DNA of 64,000 nt from the IMG/VR virus record IMGVR_UViG_3300042566_001512, positions 144,808 to 208,807 of that record. One strand, written 5' to 3'. A program made the position numbers and the translations under genes. Positions 39,907-48,034 of the stretch are shown here, in pieces; the first letter of the stretch is position 1; each line of letters begins with the position of its first letter. Below the pieces are notes generated by a model. The model was not told where the DNA came from and did not search any database. It saw only the letters and a list, made by a program, of their open reading frames with translations.

Positions 39907-42334
39907 ATGGATAAACTGGACGTGCCTTTTAACATATTTTTTCTTAGACTAGACGAGCTTACCGTTAAGTACCTCAAGCCCGTGACTTCCCTTGACGTCT
40001 TTGATGGCCTTACTAAAAACCTCCATCCGGATGGATTATATTCGCCATCCATATTCGGCGTGGTTGGAAGTAATAATAGATACACAAAATTCTCCTATAT
40101 AGACATAAAGGTAAAAATAATGCACCCGGTGTATTATAAAGCAATTACCTCTATGAAATCATTATACGAATCCATAATGACCTCAAAAGAGTTTGCGGTC
40201 TGGGACCAGGAAAAAAAGGACTTTGTAAAGTCAAACGCGTTGGCAGGGCAAACCGGTTACGACTTCTTTATACAGCACTGTGATAGCATAGTGCACGAAG
40301 AAAGACCGTCTACCGATAGACAGGAAAACATATCACTTATAAATAAATATAAACAAAATTATTTATACGATAAAATCATCGTACTTCCGGCGGCATATAG
40401 GGACATTGAAATAGATGACAATGGAAGAGAATCCTCAGATGAGATAAATTCGCTTTATTACAAAATCATAGCGATATCAAACACAATAAACATTAACACC
40501 GTAAGAATCTCACCTGAAGCTTACAACACCCAGAGAATGTCCCTGCAAAGAGCATTCAACGACACATACGAGTATCTCTCTAACCTAATTAGAGGAAAGA
40601 GTAATCTCTTTATGGGCAAGTGGGCGTCTCGAAAAATATTTAACGGGACTAGAAACGTAATTACCTCAATGAACGTTACTCAAACTGAGCTAGGAGCACC
40701 CAATTCAATAAACTACAACGACACGCTTGTTGGGCTGTACCAAACTTTAAAAGGCATTTTGCCAGTAACGTTATACAGATTAAAAACTGGGTTTTTATCT
40801 GGAGTATTTCCATCAATAAGCTCACCTGCTCTATTGACTAATAAGACAACGTTAAAATCAGAAAAAGTTGTTTTAAAGACTGCCATATATGACAAGTGGA
40901 TGACCAATGAAGGATTGGAGTCACTTATTAGCTCTTATAAAGAACCATCAATCAGACACGACTATGTCACAGTGGACAACTATTATCTAGGTTTAATTTA
41001 TAGGGGGCCGGATAATACTTTTAAATTGATACACGGAATAGACGAACTTCCTGAGGACAGAGATCCAAAAGACTGCAGGCCTATCAGCTTGACGGAGTTA
41101 TTTTATTGTTCAATCTACGAAATTACGGACAATTACCCAGCACTAGTAACGCGGTATCCAGTAACCGGAGTCGGTAGCATATACCCGTCTATGGCTAAAT
41201 TAAAATCAACGATAGAAGTGGAAAAGAGATATAAGCTAGGGGTAGACTGGACTGTAGATCCACAATCTAAAGTGGCCTACGAATTCCCAACTCAAACTGA
41301 TTTATTCAGTGCTCTGTCTCCCCATCCTTTTAAACTAGGTAGACTTTCAGCTGATGGTTTTAAATGTAAGACTATATAAAACGGTTTTACATTTTAATCA
41401 CGTCCTGTTTTGCAGAAATGCGAAATAAGATTCTTCCTTAATTGCTGGGACATCTTGACACGTTAAAAGCTACAACGTAATGCGAAAGCATAGGCGCGAA
41501 TGCTTGAAAATTTTAACGTAAGACAATCAGCAGCGAAGCTCCTGCTCCCCGCCTAAACGGGAAAGGAGAACGTTCAACGGCCAGCCCTTAAGCAAGGGGT
41601 AGGAGCAAGTGCTCCGAAATGGGAAGCGCCTTACCAGCAATTGCTAGGAAGGTGAAGATATGGTCTTACCTGCATGGAGACATGCAGCGGCTTCTAATGG
41701 AAAGCCGGTAAGCGAGGTAACGTGCGCTTATTGAAAACACGTGTTCGACGGCGATTAAAAGTTATATTAACCCTCAATACCCTCGGGTTAAAACGAGTTA
41801 ATTTATAACACAAAAAGGTTGCCTATTCGCAGTAATGTGAATATAAAAAAATCTCTCTAATTGCTGGGACTCCTCGTTAAACCACTAAGACTACAACGCA
41901 GCGCGAAAGCGCAGACGTGAGAGTTTGAAAACATTAGTGGGTAGAGACAATCAGCAGCTAAGACCCTTACTGCATATAAATTGCAAATGGGTAAAGTTCA
42001 ACGACTAGATCGAAAGATCGTACCGTGTCAAGTGACGCGGGAAACGGGAGACTCCGGTTTTTACCGGATGAAGATATAGTCTTGTCTATGCGGAGACGCG
42101 TAGCTGTGGGATAGCATTTACTTCCCTTTAAAACGAAACAGGTTAACGCCCCTGTTTGAAAACCTAACGACAAGTAGTTGTAACTTCCTCTACTCCGAAG
42201 ATTCTATTAAAGAAATTTATGATTTTTTTAATAACACTCGGTGCTACGTAGGAACTGATGGAAAATTTATTAATAGTTTAGAAATAGATACGGTTAAATA
42301 CGTTTTACATAACCTCACAGGAGAACCACAATAA
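39907..42334 (+). CDS. virion RNA polymerase beta' catalytic subunit (phiKZ gp180-like), spliced: exons 39907-41355, 41744-41755, 42170-42334 (541 aa)
   Basis: HPDGLYSPSIFG, GKWASRKIFNGTRNVI, LVTRYP; splicing restores RLSAD|FDGD|TSSCN containing the DxDGD Mg-binding motif; stop overlaps the beta ATG. Confidence 0.93.
41356..41743 (+). ncRNA. group I intron 1 (388 nt, no ORF)
   Basis: P AATTGCTGGGA 41440, Q AATCAGCAGC 41525, R GTTCAACGGCCA 41572, S AAGATATGGTC 41655; 5' exon ends in U, intron ends in G. Confidence 0.92.
41744..41755 (+). other. 12-nt micro-exon encoding FDGD
   Basis: TTC GAC GGC GAT between two group I cores. Confidence 0.9.
41756..42169 (+). ncRNA. group I intron 2 (414 nt, no ORF)
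   Basis: P AATTGCTGGGA 41859, Q AATCAGCAGC 41949, R GTTCAACGACTA 41996, S AAGATATAGTC 42071; ends ...CCTAACG. Confidence 0.92.
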
Positions 42335-45300
42335 TGAATAATCAACAAGTTTTTTATAAAACATACGGAGTTAGAAACGTAAATGAACTCGCTTCTCCTA
42401 GACTTTTTGATCTAGTAGAATTTGTGTTTCCTTTTAACAGCATAATGCACTATGCGACTTATGACTCCATTGAGAACGGCCCGCCTGGTGACTATCCGCT
42501 GTTTAACCAAATAAAGAAACCGATATACTTTAAGACAATAAACGAAATATCTGCTTTTAATGGCAGCCCAAGGCTGCAGGCCATAAACACGCAGGAACTA
42601 GTTAGGGATTACAGAAATAACAATAGGCGAATGAAGTTACTGCAGGGAGAGGTTCAAAACGTATCGGACCCTACTGTATTAACCGTATTTAATTACTGCA
42701 TATTAAATAAACAATACAAATATGCCCGCAACTTATTTACGGACTATCATCGCTGGAAGAATATATTTACAACAGTTATAGACACTTTAGTAAATAGACT
42801 TTCTAGCCCACAAATAAACCACTATATACCGCTGACTATACCGGATATAATACCTAGCATGATTCAGTTAGATTTGGCCTCCAAAGGGCTTAATCAGTCG
42901 AACCTAAAAGTATTCAAAGACAATAATAGTTTTATGCTTTTAGAGTTATGGAAGTGGCTCAATCCTGCGACTAGTTCTGATAGTCTTTTTAGCAAAATAC
43001 CTATTAACAGAATTCATCTAGTTAATCTGGTTTATATTAAAAGAAACAAGTGGTGCGTTTTAAATTTAGGCGTAATAAATAGCTTTAAGGAAGTCAGTGG
43101 GGACGCCCTTAAACCAGAAAACACACCAATTGTGCTATCTAGGGTGAAGCTCAAATACGTTCAGATACAAAAACGTATACTGAACATGATGATGACCATA
43201 GAGGCCGGATCAGTTGTGGCCGTGGATATTCCCGAGGACATTAAACTGGACGTTCCCGATCAAACGGTAGAAGAACCCGATATCTATTCAGATTACCAAG
43301 AACAAGAGGTAACCACAGAGGCCCCTGTTAAACAAAAGCCTCCTCTTACTGATAAAGAATTACTGGTTCTTCAAGAAAAAGCTAATCAGTTATTATCCGT
43401 AGAAGATGATGACGATCAAGAAATAATAGATCAAAAGATCAAGTTACAAGATCTAGAACTAGACCAAAGACTAGATCAACTTAATGAAATTAACCAAAGA
43501 AAAGAAAATGAATTACAGACAATAGAAAACTCTACTATTTACGACGTTCTTAATGAACAAGAGCCGTCCCTTTATAAATTAGTAGAAAACATGTGCGACA
43601 GGTTAGCAGATAACAACATGCTAACTGCAGCGGAATATAAAAGACTAATTAGGTTGGCCGGTTCCTATAAGACGATAACTTCAAAGGACGGTAAAAGTAC
43701 TCTAGAAGAATACGTCAAAATACCACCAGAAGATCTGGTGGTGCAGGACGTAGTTAACATACCGGATTCTCCGGCAATTGTTGATAAAACGATGCTAAAA
43801 TCTTCTTTGCAGTCATTTACTTCCGACTATGTAAAAAAGGACATAATCGGAAAAGACACTGCATCGATGGTGATCGCGATTCAAAAATCTGGAATGATAG
43901 TCACAGATTACAAGGTGGAAAAATACGAAAGTATTTTAGGTGCGGAAGAAGAGCATACGTTGAGGATTGTACCTGTAGAAGGAATCCCATCGACCATCAG
44001 ATTTAAAGTTCCAGTAGTAAACGAAGACGGTACCTTTGTGGCGTCCGGCGTCAAATATAGACTAAGAAACCAAATAGGGGATTAAGATTTATAAAATATC
44101 GCAGAACATACTTTTGCGATAGTGACAAACAATGTGTTGTCTAAAAGGTCCCCGTGCTGCAGAAACGCCGCACAAGTAAACCTACCTAATTGCGGGAAAA
44201 CGCCATATCTAAATAGCTACCACTTATACCCAGAAACGGAGTATAAATACCTGCGGGGTAATGTTCCAGACAGGCAAGGTAAAAACGCTATTAAGAGGCA
44301 TAACCGACGCAGCAAAGCCCCTAAATGCCAAAAGCGGCACATTGGGGTGGGCTCAGAGGCCATCGAAAGCTATTGCGCCAGCGCATAATAACATTCGTGT
44401 AAAGTCGAATGGTCACTATTAGCATTAGTGATTAAAGCAAGTAGAGTAGGGGCGTTTATTCGCTCCGAAACGGTAGGCACCTAACGGCACTAAACGGCTC
44501 AAGGTGAAGATATGGTCCACATGGATGAGTGCTACCCATCCGCAAAATTGATTACAATAGAGTAAGCCTAACAAGCTACTATGGAAAAACTTTTATAAAC
44601 AGATCTCGAAAGCGAGCAAACGATTACGGCACCTGGATTCAAAACGCGGTGATGGCCAAAGCGCTTAATAAGGAAGACAAAGACATTACCGATTTGTTCA
44701 CGGCAAACGTATTCGATAACACGTTAAAAGCACCAAGAGCTTACACTGGTTTATCCATGTATTTTAAATCTTTTAAGGTAAAAGATTACGTACTGATGCT
44801 AGATCACAAGGTCATAAAGAGCACAGTAAACGATAAAATACTAAAGAAGTACGAAACCGACTCAAGTGTGGTGTGCGGTTATAAAAACTCTGATTTGTTA
44901 GTAATGGATAAAAACAACGCCATTTACAAAATCAAAGATGATCAATTGGAGTTCATATCCAGCATAGAGGATTTCCTTAACATAGACAGCAGCGCTGCTC
45001 CAGTGGAGTATGCCGAAGTAGTCATAGGCGCTAAAGATATACCCGTTGGCGTCGTTCTCAGCTATTACATAGGTTTTACAAAGCTACTTAAGCTTCTTAA
45101 TTTAAACCCAGTCAGAGTAGAGGCTGGAAAACGAGTGAATCTACAACCCAATGAGTTTTCTTTGGTGTTTAGTGACGAGACTCTCGTATTCTCCAGAGAC
45201 GATAGATTATCCTCTTTAATAGTGGGTGGATTCTTGGAGTATCACAAATCCATTAGAGCGTTCAACGTCCACAGCTTTGATAAAAAGGGCGTGTACGTTA

Positions 45301-48034
45301 ATTTGCTGGAGTCTAATAAACTAGGAACCAGATATATACGTGAGATGGATCTAATGCAGCAAATGTTCATAGATCCAATAACTAAAGAGATATTAAAAGA
45401 CATGAAGGAACCAACAACGTTCAACGGTCTTTTAGTTAGAGCATGCGAGCTATTGATGGATGATAAACACCCTCAAGAGTTAGATACGAAGTACATGCGA
45501 ATAAAGGGATACGAAAGAATACCTGGGGCCGTTTATAGGCAACTAGTTGCAGCTATACGCCAGCACAATGCGCAGTTAGGCAAGGCATCCAAGCAAATGA
45601 CACTCGATCCTTACGCAATATGGCGCTACATTACAGAGGATCCGACTAAGGTTCAGATAAGTGAGATTAATCCTATTCAGGCACTTAAAGAAACCGAAGC
45701 CGTAACTTTTTCAGGAACGGGCGGCCGTAGTAGCCGAAGCATGGTAAAAAGCACAAGAGCTTACCACAAAAACTCTATGGGCACTATTAGCGAGTCCACC
45801 GTTGACTCCTCTGATGTAGGTATAAATATCTACACTAGCGCCAATCCGCAATTTAATTCTTTGCGAGGAATATCCAGAGAATTTGATTTTGAGAAACAAG
45901 GTGCCACTAGCTTGCTATCCACCTCCGCAATGCTGGCACCGGCATCCGACAAAGATGATTAATAGTTTATTACAAAAATAAACTAATGGTCCGACAGATC
46001 AGCGATGATCAGTTTGTAATCTCCTTAATTGCTGGGACTCCCTTATAGCCGTTTTACTACAATGATCACGAAAGTGAGTCATGACAGTTAGAAAACAAAA
46101 CGGATTGGGTAATCAGCAGCGAAGCCTCTTTAAAATGAGGAACGTTCAACGACTAAGATCTTATCAATCTGTACCTGCAAAGTGTGGGGAAACGGGAGAC
46201 TGCTCCATCAGGAGCAGAAGATATAGTCTCTTCTGCATTGAGAGATGCAGCTGCGCAAACGCGCGAGTTAGATTAACGAACTAACTGAAGGTAAAGCCAA
46301 AACGAGTAAACTTAAAATGCTCCCTTTGAGAGTAATCTCAATTGAAAAACTTCTCTAATTGACAAGAAGTCCCTTATAGACAATTGACTACAGCGTGACC
46401 GGAAACGGTGAGCGTGAGAGTTTAGGACGATTGTATTGGGTAACTTGCAGCGAAGCTCCTATAAAAACGGAGAACGTTCATCGACTAGACCGTAAGGTCG
46501 TACACTCAAGTGAGTGGAAACGGGAAGCTCCTTTAGAAAAACTAAAGGATGGTGACATAGTCAGTTCTGTAGTGAAAGTTACAGCGGGTCATGTTTGGCC
46601 GGCATCGACGAAAAACTAGTCGATGTGAACATAAAGAAATTTTGTAGCCATACAACAAGGTCACTCCATAGCTTGCGACGGGTACCATCAGCCAACGGTG
46701 AGAACCGGCTACGATCAAGTGGTGGCTCATCGCTCCCATGATCTATTCGCAATAACCGCCACAAAACCAGGAACGGTATTGTCCATCAACAAAAAGGGCA
46801 TAGTGGTAGAATATGCAGATAAAACAAAACAAGGATACGAGCTAGGAAGGCGATTTGGTAATGCGGCAGGTTTGGTAATACCGCACGAAATAGTAACCGA
46901 TCTTAAAGCAGGTCAAGAGTTTGAAATCGGTGAGGCCATTTGCTATAACTCCGGGTTCTTTGAGCCGGATTTCTTTGATCCTAAGAGAATAGTTTTAAAG
47001 AATTCATTCAACGTAAGAACGGTTCTTTGGGAATCGCTGCAGACCTTAGAAGACGCTTCTTCTATTACAGAAAAGACTGCTAATAAACTAGTCACCTCTG
47101 TGACTAAAGTAAAGAACGTTTTGGTTTCGTTCGATCAGACTGTCAGTAATTTAGTAAAGATAGGAGAGAAGGTGGACTACGACACCGTCCTTTGTTATAT
47201 TCAGGACAGTATTACTGCTGGAAATAAACTTTTCACAGACGAAACCATAGACACATTAAAAATGCTAGGTGCCCAATCCCCCAGGGCGCACGTGCAAGGC
47301 GTTGTAGAGGCCATTGAGGTTTACTATCACGGAGAGAAAGAGGACATGTCCGAGTCTCTGCTGGAGCTATGCAACGAAAGCGATAAACGTCTGAAATATG
47401 TGGCAAATAGTCAAGGCAAAAAATTCATGTCGGGAAGCGTGGACTCCGGCTTCCGGATTGAAGCCAATCCTCTTGCTCTAGACTGCGTCGCTATAAGAAT
47501 CTACATTACTACGAAAGCACCCGCTGGAATTGGCGATTAGTTTTTAGTCCTGCTACGATGAAAATCGTAAACAGTTTTCTCCTTAATTGCTGGAAACTCT
47601 TTTATAAAAAAAGACAATCAGCAGCGAAGCCTCATTCCCAAAAAAATGAGGAACGTTCAACGACTATCCCGTAGCTGGGAGTAGGGTCATGTGGCCCCAA
47701 ACAGGAGATATCTTCGGGTCTTAACTGGCCAAAGATAAAGATATAGTCTAGTCTATGCGGTGACGCGTAGCTGCGAAATATAAAAAGTCGCAGGATTGGG
47801 TCTAACGAACCCAATCTAATAAAAACGAAAGGCGTGTTTGCTAACCAGATGAAGACAGTTTTTAGTGAAACTATAAAGCAGAGTTACAAAACTGAAGACG
47901 GAAAAGAAATAGACGCGGTTTTTGGTGCAAAGAGTATCGACGACCGTATCGTTAACTCCGCAGTTATAATTGGCACGGCCAATGCCACTCTTGACATTAT
48001 TACTGATAAAGCAGTAGAGATGTATTTTTCTTAA
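42334..48034 (+). CDS. virion RNA polymerase beta subunit (phiKZ gp178-like), spliced: exons 42334-44082, 44532-45959, 46297-46307, 46637-47537, 47828-48034 (1431 aa)
   Basis: Splicing restores IGD|LPIRKI, KDD|PKRV|NFVAIQQGHS and GIGD|KGVFANQMK; exon sum 4296 nt = 1432 codons; AGGAG SD. Confidence 0.92.
44083..44531 (+). ncRNA. group I intron 3 (449 nt, divergent core)
   Basis: P AATTGCGGGAAA 44188, Q-like AACCGACGCAGC 44302, R GCTCAGAGGCCA 44351, S AAGATATGGTC 44507; P3 CCTACC/GGTAGG. Confidence 0.85.
45960..46296 (+). ncRNA. group I intron 4 (337 nt, no ORF)
   Basis: P 46027, Q AATCAGCAGC 46111, R GTTCAACGACTA 46144, S AAGATATAGTC 46218; ends ...GTAAAG. Confidence 0.92.
46297..46307 (+). 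other. 11-nt micro-exon (CCA AAA CGA GT, PKRV)
   Basis: Needed to rebuild DDPKRVNF in frame; ends in U and is preceded by G. Confidence 0.85.
46308..46636 (+). ncRNA. group I intron 5 (329 nt, no ORF)
   Basis: P AATTGACAAGAA 46357 covaries with Q AACTTGCAGC 46442; R GTTCATCGACTA 46476; S GTGACATAGTC 46552; ends ...ATAAAG. Confidence 0.88.
47538..47827 (+). ncRNA. group I intron 6 (290 nt, no ORF)
   Basis: P AATTGCTGGAAA 47585, Q 47616, R GTTCAACGACTA 47655, S AAGATATAGTC 47738; splits GD|K. Confidence 0.92.

What the first reader, a model, noticed from the sequence alone, without database searches (positions are those of the whole stretch)
45960..46636. Second tandem intron pair leaving an 11-nt, phase-shifting micro-exon in vRNAP beta
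Seen: ...GAT GAT | 337-nt intron | CCA AAA CGA GT | 329-nt intron | A AAT TTT GTA GCC rebuilds DDPKRVNFVAIQQGHS. The second intron is phase 2, splitting the Val codon. Skipping the 11-nt exon would shift the frame, unlike the 12-nt case. Two independent micro-exons in one operon point to repeated intron insertion a few nucleotides apart at conserved hot spots (inference).
Basis: partly seen in the sequence, partly recalled or inferred. Interest (0 to 1): 0.8.

Follow-up and report, generated by a model that had tools for sequence, protein, structure and literature searches.

The report
Two self-splicing introns, 11-base exon
In an uncultured freshwater jumbo phage, the gene for a virion RNA polymerase subunit is broken by two separate group I self-splicing introns only 11 bases apart. 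Each sits at a spot that mobile introns have invaded repeatedly in related phages. The piece between them is a real 11-base exon, so this is an unusual arrangement of a well-known kind of element.

Summary
The exon ends GAT GAT at 45959. Then come a 337-nt intron (45960-46296), an 11-nt exon (46297-46307), a 329-nt intron (46308-46636), and the exon resumes at 46637. Both inserts are full-length Rfam group I intron matches (86.7 and 77.5 bits against a cut-off of 50).

Intronless homologues have exactly 12 nt here, encoding PKRV or close variants, so the rebuilt DDPKRVNF is right. Among 138 distinct related loci:
- 96 have no intron here;
- 26 have one only after DD, the known PhiPA3 gp210 / 201phi2-1 site;
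- 10 have one only 11 nt downstream, plus one with an odd 3' end;
- 5 have both, in two diverged lineages.

No other position within these 12 nt is used. The downstream intron's guide sequence covaries with the third base of the Arg codon (A-U, G-C, C-G and U-A), which fixes its 5' splice site.

The two introns are not a local duplication. Neither carries an endonuclease gene here, although relatives carry homologous I-HmuI-like HNH genes at both sites. Independent metagenomes confirm the DNA arrangement. No RNA reads show the junctions, so splicing itself is inferred.

It is a new member of a known kind with an uncommon arrangement; interest is moderate.

The parts
44532..45959 (+). Exon before the pair, in the vRNAP beta-like gene (phiKZ gp178 / RP12 ORF041 family). 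It ends ...SDKDD with GAT GAT.
   Evidence: tblastn with RP12 ORF041 residues 635-1110 gives 50.6% identity. Translation.
45960..46296 (+). Intron 1 (site 1, phase 0): a 337-nt group I intron with no endonuclease gene. P1 pairs 45957-45961 with 45987-45991, with the U45959-G45989 wobble at the splice site. The Rfam core match spans 45959-46250. Two 3' hairpins lie at 46252-46265 and 46266-46286. The terminal G is at 46296.
   Evidence: RF00028 at 86.7 bits, E = 1e-20, full model. P1 hairpin MFE -9.7 kcal/mol, z = -3.8. 50 of 68 predicted pairs show compensatory changes across 16 site-1 introns. Same site as the PhiPA3 and 201phi2-1 introns.
46297..46307 (+). 11-nt micro-exon CCA AAA CGA GT, encoding P K R and the first two bases of V.
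   Evidence: Intronless homologues have exactly 12 nt here, encoding PKRV/AKRV. The same 11-nt exon, with a synonymous CGA/CGG change, is in L005, L008/L009, L124 and L117. PDB phmmer aligns DDPKR with the HDDANR motif of Thermus RpoB.
46308..46636 (+). Intron 2 (site 2, phase 2): a 329-nt group I intron with no endonuclease gene. P1 pairs 46304-46308 with 46318-46322, with the U46307-G46319 wobble. The MFE fold also pairs exon 46298-46301 with 46325-46328. Two 3' hairpins lie at 46587-46600 and 46602-46626. The terminal G is at 46636.
   Evidence: RF00028 at 77.5 bits, E = 6e-18, full model. P1 fold. The guide sequence covaries with the exon: GAGU/GCUC, GGGU/GCCC, GCGU/GCGC, GUGU/GCAC. 28 of 43 predicted pairs are compensatory across 9 site-2 introns.
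46637..47527 (+). Exon after the pair. It begins with the A that completes Val, then NFVAIQQGHS..., and ends ...AGIGD.
   Evidence: tblastn gives 50-52% identity to FLC9 and RP12. Translation.
41356..42169 (+). Context: the other tandem pair, in the upstream DFDGD-bearing subunit gene. Intron 41356-41743, 12-nt micro-exon 41744-41755 (TTCGACGGCGAT = FDGD), intron 41756-42169.
   Evidence: RF00028 at 83.6 and 88.8 bits. RP12 ORF042 reads LGADFDGDTASGN where the window reads LSAD | FDGD | TSSCN. Polymorphic in relatives.
44083..44531 (+). Context: a further group I intron in the same gene, between ...NQIGD and LPIRK...
   Evidence: RF00028 at 47.2 bits, E = 1e-9, just under the cut-off of 50. 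Exon junctions placed from RP12 ...QRGDMPIRK.
47528..47827 (+). Context: a further group I intron in the same gene, between ...AGIGD and KGVFANQ...
   Evidence: RF00028 at 101.7 bits. Exon junction placed from RP12 ...AGVGDKGVFGNQ.

Best explanation
Two separate, endonuclease-less group I self-splicing introns occupy two neighbouring homing sites in the virion RNA polymerase beta-like gene. Site 1 lies right after the conserved Asp-Asp. Site 2 lies 11 nt further on, inside the Val codon.

Each ribozyme finds its own 5' splice site through its own P1 helix. Intron 1 pairs exon GAU with GUC in its guide sequence. Intron 2 pairs exon GAGU, and possibly more of the micro-exon, with GCUC. Each intron ends in its own terminal G. 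The two introns should therefore be removable in either order. The spliced mRNA then reads ...DDPKRVNF..., colinear with intronless homologues.

The 11-nt exon is simply what is left between two hot spots that mobile introns carrying related I-HmuI-like HNH nickases have invaded repeatedly in this phage group. In this genome both introns have lost, or never had, the endonuclease gene.

Shown: the ribozyme cores, the splice-site signals, the restored reading frame, the presence/absence polymorphism at exactly two sites, the P1 covariation, and the homology of the endonucleases in relatives. Inferred: that splicing actually occurs, that its order is free, and that the pair arose by two separate insertions.
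For: 1. Both inserts are full-length RF00028 matches well above the cut-off.
2. Both 5' exons end in U, which forms a U-G wobble in a stable P1 hairpin, and both introns end in G.
3. Intronless homologues have exactly four codons (PKRV/AKRV) between DD and NF.
4. Among 138 distinct loci, introns in this stretch sit only at offset 0 or offset 11. The counts are 26 at site 1 only, 10 at site 2 only (plus L031, with an odd 3' end), 5 at both and 96 at neither.
5. Within the window's own clade (79-85% protein identity) all states exist: none (L010), site 2 only with an endonuclease gene (L007), both with an endonuclease gene in intron 2 (L008/L009), and both without (L005, L124, window).
6. The base pair between exon position -3 and the guide sequence of site-2 introns takes all four Watson-Crick forms. 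Helices of both intron sets are rich in compensatory changes.
7. The two introns are about 70% alike over alignable columns, no closer to each other than to introns at other sites. The best matches of intron 1 are site-1 introns of distant phages.
8. The site-2 endonuclease of L008 and PhiPA3 gp210 (site 1) are homologous HNH_3 + NUMOD proteins.
9. The second Asp codon is GAT in all 31 site-1 carriers, against 45 GAT and 45 GAC among the 96 intronless loci. This fits the need for a U at the splice site.
Against: - There is no RNA evidence. The two RNA runs that share words with this stretch gave one exon contig (45473-45663) and foreign intron cores, but no spliced junction.
- P10 pairing for intron 1 is at most one base pair.
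- In intron 2 the conserved stretch just before the 3' strand of P7 reads GGUGACAUAGUC, against the usual GAAGAUAUAGUC. Its activity is therefore not guaranteed by sequence alone.
- The intron tree is poorly resolved, and site-1 and site-2 introns do not form clean clades. The history of the two insertions cannot be read from it.
Confidence: 0.82

Rival explanations
1. The pair arose by local tandem duplication of one intron, or it travels as a single unit, rather than by two independent insertions.
For: All six introns of the window belong to one broad sequence family, with similar cores and similar 3' tails (UGAA..UAAAG). In the distant tandem locus L117, the two introns are among each other's best matches. 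An intron 11 nt from an endonuclease-bearing intron would be expected to be carried along by co-conversion during homing; this last point is inference.
Against: The window's two introns are not each other's best match. They are no more alike than either is to introns at unrelated sites. Each site is occupied alone in many phages. Intron types also assort independently within the window's clade. The L005/L008/L124 type of intron 1 is found with two unrelated types of intron 2, and the L007/L008 type of intron 2 is found with and without intron 1.
Confidence: 0.1
2. The junctions differ from those proposed. For example, the 3' splice site of intron 1 could lie after G46290, adding Val-Lys. Or the 5' splice site of intron 2 could lie after U46313, adding two residues. 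Both alternatives keep the frame.
For: Both alternatives obey the U-before / G-at-end rule and stay in frame (read).
Against: All 96 intronless loci have exactly 12 nt between DD and N/G-F, with no two-residue insertion. The P1 covariation fixes the 5' site of intron 2 at GU|. In the single-site and tandem loci that could be scored, the terminal G falls directly before CCN-AAR (site 1) or one base before AAY-TTY (site 2); L031 is the one exception.
Confidence: 0.03
3. The gene is dead or deliberately split here. One or both introns no longer splice, and the exon-sized ORFs are pseudogene pieces or separate subunits.
For: Jumbo-phage RNA polymerases are naturally split into several polypeptides (established knowledge). 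The upstream ORF runs straight into a TAA at the start of the intron. No splicing was seen in RNA data. The stretch before P7 in intron 2 departs from the consensus.
Against: All exons keep open frames at about 50% identity to functional homologues. The downstream exon has no start codon at its beginning. The 11 nt keep the conserved PKRV codons, including the Arg that aligns with the HDDANR motif of bacterial RpoB. The arrangement persists in five diverged genomes with synonymous and compensatory changes only. Near-identical DNA is present in at least two independent water samples.
Confidence: 0.04
4. The arrangement is a twintron (one intron inserted inside another), or it is an assembly chimera caused by the repeated intron cores.
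For: The short-read assemblies break at the conserved core around 46111-46155, where foreign intron cores pile up.
Against: The 11 nt between the two ribozymes are the expected coding bases, and each intron has its own P1 and terminal G. X2 contig 17 runs uninterrupted from 46126 to 47299, across the micro-exon and all of intron 2. X2 contig 14 runs from 42161 to 46140. The same layout occurs in L005, L008, L009, L124 and L117, from five other contigs in different sources.
Confidence: 0.01

Closest known systems
The PhiPA3 gp210 mobile group I intron in vRNAP beta (gp211/gp209), and the 201phi2-1 gp273/274 intron
   Same: Same gene family and the same insertion point as intron 1, immediately after the two conserved Asp codons (GAT GAT|) (PMC11620839). 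Similar ribozyme cores. 201phi2-1 also lacks an endonuclease gene and is annotated as a joined CDS.
   Different: PhiPA3 and 201phi2-1 have a single intron here. The window has a second intron 11 nt downstream. PhiPA3 carries the HNH nickase gp210, whereas the window has no endonuclease homologue anywhere in its 64 kb. I did not find site 2 described in the papers I could search.
[quoted passage not shown]
   Same: Several related group I introns in one phage gene. In Twort, some transcripts lack an exon between two introns, so skipping is a real risk for closely spaced introns.
   Different: I could not read the original paper, so I do not know the Twort exon sizes. Here the internal exon is 11 nt, so skipping would destroy the reading frame instead of giving an alternative protein.
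Mini-exons between group I/II introns in mitochondrial genes
   Same: [quoted passage not shown] The arrangement and its cause are the same: introns crowd into the most conserved codons.
   Different: Those are organellar genomes with other intron lineages, often assisted by maturases. This case is a virus of bacteria, with phage-type introns whose relatives move by HNH nickases.
Introns in the SPO1 / SP82 / Bastille DNA polymerase genes, with I-HmuI-family nicking endonucleases
   Same: The endonucleases in relatives at both sites match Pfam HNH_3, NUMOD1 and I-HmuI_NUMOD-like. The biology is the same: competition between intron endonucleases at one conserved target (cited in PMC11620839 and PMC12908238).
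   Different: From memory, not tested here: those introns share one identical insertion site. Here there are two sites 11 nt apart, and both can be occupied at once.

Membership tests
Group I self-splicing intron (Rfam RF00028) | Conserved catalytic core (P3-P9, including P7 with the G-binding site) recognised by the covariance model | tested here: met
   86.7 bits (45959-46250) and 77.5 bits (46298-46584), both covering model positions 1-253, against a cut-off of 50. The GACUA...UAGUC strands of P7 are present in both.
Group I self-splicing intron (Rfam RF00028) | The 5' exon ends in U, which forms a U-G wobble with the internal guide sequence in P1 | tested here: met
   U45959-G45989 and U46307-G46319 appear in the MFE hairpins. 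The guide sequence of site-2 introns covaries with the exon in all four Watson-Crick forms.
Group I self-splicing intron (Rfam RF00028) | The last intron nucleotide is G | tested here: met
   G46296 and G46636. The same holds in the relatives at both sites that were scored, except L031/L032.
Group I self-splicing intron (Rfam RF00028) | Helices are maintained by compensatory substitutions among homologues | tested here: met
   RNAalifold finds compensatory changes in 50 of 68 predicted pairs (16 site-1 introns) and in 28 of 43 (9 site-2 introns). The MAFFT alignments are imperfect in the variable loops.
Group I self-splicing intron (Rfam RF00028) | Removal restores a reading frame colinear with intronless homologues | tested here: met
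   Exactly 12 nt (PKRV/AKRV) lie between DD and NF in the intronless loci.
Group I self-splicing intron (Rfam RF00028) | Guanosine-dependent self-splicing, with ligated exons observed | tested here: inconclusive
   Two RNA runs were laid on 41300-47299. They gave one exon contig and no joints at the predicted sites. A bench assay is needed.
Mobile (homing) group I intron with an I-HmuI-like HNH endonuclease, as in PhiPA3 gp210 | The intron encodes a homing endonuclease | tested here: not met
   The introns are 337 and 329 nt. tblastn with three intron endonucleases and one DUF723 intron ORF found nothing in the window (all E > 3). Relatives do carry such genes at both sites: 14 of 26 site-1 introns and 4 of 10 site-2 introns are over 1 kb, and L007 and L008 encode 515-516-aa HNH proteins.
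Mobile (homing) group I intron with an I-HmuI-like HNH endonuclease, as in PhiPA3 gp210 | Same insertion site as the characterised element | tested here: met
   Intron 1 lies after GAT GAT, as in PhiPA3 and 201phi2-1 (PMC11620839). Intron 2 lies at a different site, +11.
Mobile (homing) group I intron with an I-HmuI-like HNH endonuclease, as in PhiPA3 gp210 | Presence/absence polymorphism among close relatives, not matching the host-gene phylogeny | tested here: met
   Within the 79-85% identity clade all four states are found. Intron types do not follow host similarity.
Mobile (homing) group I intron with an I-HmuI-like HNH endonuclease, as in PhiPA3 gp210 | The endonuclease cleaves or nicks the intronless allele, and the intron moves in crosses | not testable with these tools
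   Shown only for PhiPA3 gp210, which nicks the intronless target in vitro (PMC11620839).
Twintron (an intron inside an intron) | The second intron interrupts the sequence of the first, with no coding bases between them | tested here: not met
   The 11 conserved coding bases separate two complete ribozymes. Each site is occupied alone in other phages.

The most novel reading that the evidence does not exclude
Double occupancy may not be a passive leftover. It could be selected as protection. In PhiPA3, the site-1 intron nickase works as a weapon against co-infecting intronless phages (PMC11620839). A genome whose target stretch is split at both sites by endonuclease-less introns would offer an intact recognition sequence to neither of the two related nickase lineages. 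That could explain why this phage keeps six endonuclease-less introns exactly at positions where relatives carry armed ones. A related possibility is that an unarmed intron 11 nt from an armed one spreads by riding its co-conversion tract, as the L008 arrangement would allow. Nothing here tests either idea. The observed co-occurrence (5 loci, against about 3.6 expected under independence; my arithmetic) shows neither attraction nor exclusion.
Probability: 0.2. Interest if true: 0.7.

Novelty: new member of a known kind. Interest (0 to 1): 0.45.

Why it matters
The case shows that the most conserved codons of jumbo-phage virion RNA polymerase genes are crowded landing sites for mobile introns. 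Here these are the beta-type DD-x-x-R stretch and the beta-prime-type DFDGD motif. Two sites only 11-12 nt apart can be filled at the same time, which leaves exons shorter than four codons.

This matters in three ways:
- **Annotation.** Gene callers split these genes into exon-sized ORFs. More than 100 such fragments of about 480 aa are in the protein databases. They also drop the micro-exon residues.
- **Intron biology.** The locus is a compact natural test bed. It can show how short an exon can be when it must serve both as the 3' exon of one ribozyme and as the P1 substrate of the next. It can show whether exon skipping occurs, and whether neighbouring homing sites interfere with each other.
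- **Phage competition.** It identifies a second homing site, with its own branch of I-HmuI-like nickases, next to the one shown to act in PhiPA3/phiKZ competition.

Tried and rejected
- **Megablast of 44500-47600 against phage genomes:** no match. The genome is new. Its closest isolates, the RP12-like Ralstonia phages, are only about 50% identical in protein.
- **RNA evidence:** both sequencing-run searches and the single read-laying run were used. Only an exon contig and foreign intron cores were found, with no splice joints. The listed joints, such as 46155 to 46500, have short sides (about 22 nt) and inserted letters. They join conserved cores of other organisms' introns and are not products of this locus.
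- **Intron tree:** too poorly resolved to say which site was invaded first or whether the site-1 and site-2 introns are separate lineages. I use it only to say that the two window introns are not sisters.
- **The 9-mer AAAACGAGT:** it is shared by the micro-exon (46299-46307) and the inside of the second intron of the upstream pair (41790-41798). It looked like a fossil exon flank. But it occurs four times in the window and is absent from the equivalent introns of relatives, so I treat it as chance.
- **RNAalifold pairing of GGU in the site-1 guide region with G|CC at the 3' junction:** it conflicts with P1 and rests on invariant columns. It is not evidence for P10.
- **Pfam on the exon proteins:** no hit. 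The polymerase assignment therefore rests on annotated phage homologues and on a weak PDB match to Thermus RpoB (E = 0.0015) that aligns DDPKR with HDDANR.
- **The Twort paper:** it could not be opened.
- **Literature searches for phage micro-exons between group I introns:** nothing relevant was returned. This is absence from the held library, not proof of absence.
Full report
**1. What is in the sequence**

Reading 45700-46900 confirms the finding exactly:
- The open frame that begins after the previous intron ends ...GAC AAA GAT GAT at 45959 and then runs into TAA.
- 337 nt later, after G46296, stand the eleven bases CCAAAACGAGT (46297-46307).
- After another 329 nt that end in G46636, the frame resumes with A AAT TTT GTA GCC.
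- Joined, this reads DDPKRVNFVAIQQGHS, with Val split GT|A.

**2. The inserts are group I introns**

A scan of the whole window against Rfam found five matches to RF00028 above the curated cut-off. A sixth fell just below it (44094-44529 by the model; 47.2 bits against 50). All six lie in the two adjacent virion RNA polymerase genes.

The two introns of this finding score 86.7 bits (45959-46250) and 77.5 bits (46298-46584), and both cover the full model. The Rfam model ends after P9. Each intron then has about 50 further nucleotides that form two hairpins, followed by a similar tail (UGAAGGUAAAG and UGAACAUAAAG).

Short folds give the expected P1 helices:
- In intron 1, exon G45957-A-U45959 pairs with G45989-U-C45991. 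The splice-site U-G wobble sits on top of a 9-bp extension.
- In intron 2, exon G46304-A-G-U46307 pairs with G46319-C-U-C46322. The MFE fold also pairs 46298-46301 with 46325-46328. Up to 8 of the micro-exon's 11 bases may therefore sit in the P1 of intron 2.

**3. The 11 bases are an exon**

tblastn with the flanking exons against 50,697 phage records hits about 300 jumbo phages. In RP12, RP31, FLC9, Xoo-sp14 and RTH11 the two matches are exactly 12 nt apart. Those 12 nt translate to PKRV (RP12, Xoo-sp14) or AKRV (FLC9), giving KDDPKRVNF and its variants.

A phmmer search of the intronless relative L010 against PDB sequences aligns DDPKR with HDDANR of Thermus RpoB. Birkholz et al. place the two Asp at the position of E. 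coli RpoB D675 (PMC11620839). The micro-exon therefore encodes part of one of the most conserved stretches of the beta subunit.

**4. Gene map**

Using RP12 ORF042 and ORF041 as guides:

| Gene | Segment | Coordinates |
|---|---|---|
| A (carries the beta-prime-type DFDGD motif) | exon | 39907-41355 |
| | intron | 41356-41743 |
| | micro-exon (FDGD) | 41744-41755 |
| | intron | 41756-42169 |
| | exon | 42170-42334 |
| B (phiKZ gp178 family) | exon | 42334-44082 |
| | intron | 44083-44531 |
| | exon | 44532-45959 |
| | intron | 45960-46296 |
| | micro-exon | 46297-46307 |
| | intron | 46308-46636 |
| | exon | 46637-47527 |
| | intron | 47528-47827 |
| | exon | 47828-48034 |

Five of the six introns follow an Asp codon GAT. 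Only the intron at 46308 follows GT.

**5. Provenance and DNA support**

The window is 100% identical over the matched exon to IMG/VR contig IMGVR_UViG_3300042566_001512 (208,807 bp), and the best DNA holder is a lake-water metagenome run.

An independent freshwater run (X2) holds 94% of the sampled words. Its contigs cover 42161-46140 and 46126-47299 with 2-4 differences. This includes an unbroken stretch across the micro-exon and intron 2.

No spliced RNA was seen. One metatranscriptome has an exact exon contig (45473-45663). Everything else from the RNA runs is foreign intron cores.

**6. Relatives**

A protein search with the exon-sized piece, restricted by the tool to proteins of similar length, returned more than 100 ORFs of about 480 aa. 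Many stop exactly at ...DD. Others stop a few residues after DDPKRV. A few run through to the next intron site.

I fetched DNA for the four closest, 80 IMG/VR loci and 80 metagenome loci. I then measured the distance between the DD and NF anchors.

Counts among 138 distinct loci:

| State | Loci |
|---|---|
| No intron (exactly 12 nt) | 96 |
| Intron at offset 0 only (site 1) | 26 |
| Intron at offset 11 only (site 2) | 10, plus L031 with an odd 3' end |
| Both | 5 |

No other offset occurs.

In the window's own clade (79-85% protein identity) every state is present:
- L010 has none.
- L007 has site 2 only, with a 516-aa HNH gene.
- L008/L009 have both, with a 515-aa HNH gene in intron 2.
- L005, L124 and the window have both, without any endonuclease gene.

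A fifth tandem locus, L117, is only 51% identical in protein. Double occupancy therefore exists in at least two lineages.

With site 1 filled in 31 of 138 loci and site 2 in 16 of 138, independence predicts about 3.6 double carriers. Five are seen. This is my arithmetic and is not corrected for relatedness. It shows neither exclusion nor attraction.

**7. Splice sites tested by covariation**

In site-2 introns, the exon's last four bases and the guide sequence change together:
- GAGU with GCUC: window, L007, L008, L139.
- GGGU with GCCC: L005, L124, L087, L102, L110, L142.
- GCGU with GCGC: L031, L080.
- GUGU with GCAC: L070, L076.
- L117 uses a G-U pair.

RNAalifold on nine site-2 introns reports the same pair as GC 3, AU 2, CG 2, UA 1, GU 1. 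It finds compensatory changes in 28 of 43 predicted pairs. Sixteen site-1 introns give 50 of 68.

The variable exon base is the third position of the Arg codon. Protein constraint cannot explain the pattern, but RNA pairing can. This fixes the 3' edge of the micro-exon.

The 5' edge rests on three things: the terminal G directly before CCN-AAR in the 31 site-1 carriers scored, the 12-nt rule, and the site-1 P1. The second Asp codon is GAT in all 31 carriers, against 45 GAT and 45 GAC among the 96 intronless loci.

**8. Origin of the pair**

The two window introns are about 70% identical over alignable columns, like any two introns of this family. They are not sisters in the weakly resolved tree, and they are not each other's best BLAST match. 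The best matches of intron 1 are site-1 introns of distant phages.

Within the clade, intron types assort independently:
- One type of intron 1 (L005/L008/L124) is combined with two unrelated types of intron 2.
- The armed intron 2 of L007/L008 (92% identical) occurs with and without intron 1.

This argues for separate gains, losses or replacements at each site. It argues against a local duplication or an obligate unit.

**9. Link to known biology**

Site 1 is the insertion point of the PhiPA3 intron that encodes the HNH nickase gp210. There the reading is ...NDD | MKRVGF. [quoted passage not shown]

201phi2-1 gp273/274 has an endonuclease-less intron at the same point, annotated as a joined CDS.

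The site-2 endonuclease of L008 is homologous to gp210 (31-32% identity). Both match HNH_3, NUMOD1 and I-HmuI_NUMOD-like. Two branches of one nickase family thus appear to home to targets shifted by 11 nt.

The window itself contains no homologue of these proteins.

**10. How it most likely works**

Each intron carries its own recognition elements. Those of intron 2 lie wholly inside the micro-exon. Either intron can therefore be removed first, and both must be removed to give a functional subunit. This is inference from the anatomy.

Joining 45959 directly to 46637 would drop 11 nt and shift the frame. Exon skipping between similar phage introns is documented for Twort (PMC3073962). Some loss of product by this route is therefore conceivable, but it is untested.

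**11. Novelty**

These parts are already known:
- Group I introns in phage genes.
- The site-1 intron in this very gene family.
- HNH-mediated homing.
- Mini-exons of under four codons between organellar introns (PMC10352661).

These parts I did not find described in the searchable library:
- A second homing site 11 nt from the PhiPA3 site.
- Simultaneous occupancy of both sites in a phage, leaving an 11-nt phase-shifting exon.
- The parallel 12-nt FDGD exon in the neighbouring gene.

I rate this a new member of a known kind with an unusual arrangement, of moderate interest.

Noticed in passing
window 41356-42169: The other tandem pair splits the catalytic DFDGD motif: ...LSAD | FDGD (12 nt, 41744-41755) | TSSCN... 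Among about 104 distinct related loci, 84 have no intron here, about 10 have one after AD only, 3 have one after FDGD only, and 3 have both (window, L005, L018).
   Followed up: partly
L086 and L122 (gene A homologues, DFDGD region): Two relatives seem to carry an intron at yet other positions inside or just after the Phe codon of FDGD (offsets 1 and 3). The DFDGD hot spot therefore has more than two insertion points, unlike the DD..NF stretch.
   Followed up: no
window 44083-44531: A sixth group I intron, between ...NQIGD and LPIRK..., scores 47.2 bits. This is just under Rfam's cut-off of 50, so a default scan misses it. In L008 the equivalent intron holds a 485-aa ORF with a DUF723 match.
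   Followed up: partly
L031 and L032 (IMG/VR), site-2 intron: With the 5' site fixed by P1 (GCGU/GCGC), the only in-frame 3' junction makes the intron end in A (...CUCGCA|A AAU UUU) instead of the usual G. This could be a non-canonical terminal base, a decaying intron, or a different local protein sequence.
   Followed up: no
window 46100-46700, in runs X14, X2 and X3: Word depth is 10-100 times higher over the intron cores than over the exons, with many loose ends at 46111 and 46155. Closely similar group I cores from other organisms are abundant in wastewater and freshwater samples, and they break short-read assemblies at these points.
   Followed up: partly
window 46470-46500 (intron 2, stretch before the 3' strand of P7): This stretch reads GGUGACAUAGUC, where most relatives have GAAGAUAUAGUC. 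Run X2 has G>A at 46492. I did not assess whether this weakens the ribozyme.
   Followed up: no
window 39734, 41790, 45128, 46299: The 9-mer AAAACGAGT occurs four times, once in the micro-exon and once inside the second intron of the upstream pair. It is not conserved in that intron in relatives, so it is probably chance.
   Followed up: yes
protein database hits P0001-P0120: More than 100 ORFs of about 480 aa in public metagenome protein sets are single exons of this polymerase gene, bounded by introns on both sides, and most are unnamed. Intron-split vRNAP genes are common in environmental jumbo phages and are systematically mis-called.
   Followed up: partly
window 45473-45663: A metatranscriptome (run X11, aquatic) holds an exact 191-nt match to this exon at low depth. 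The phage, or its DNA as carry-over, is present in that sample, but coverage is too thin to see junctions.
   Followed up: partly
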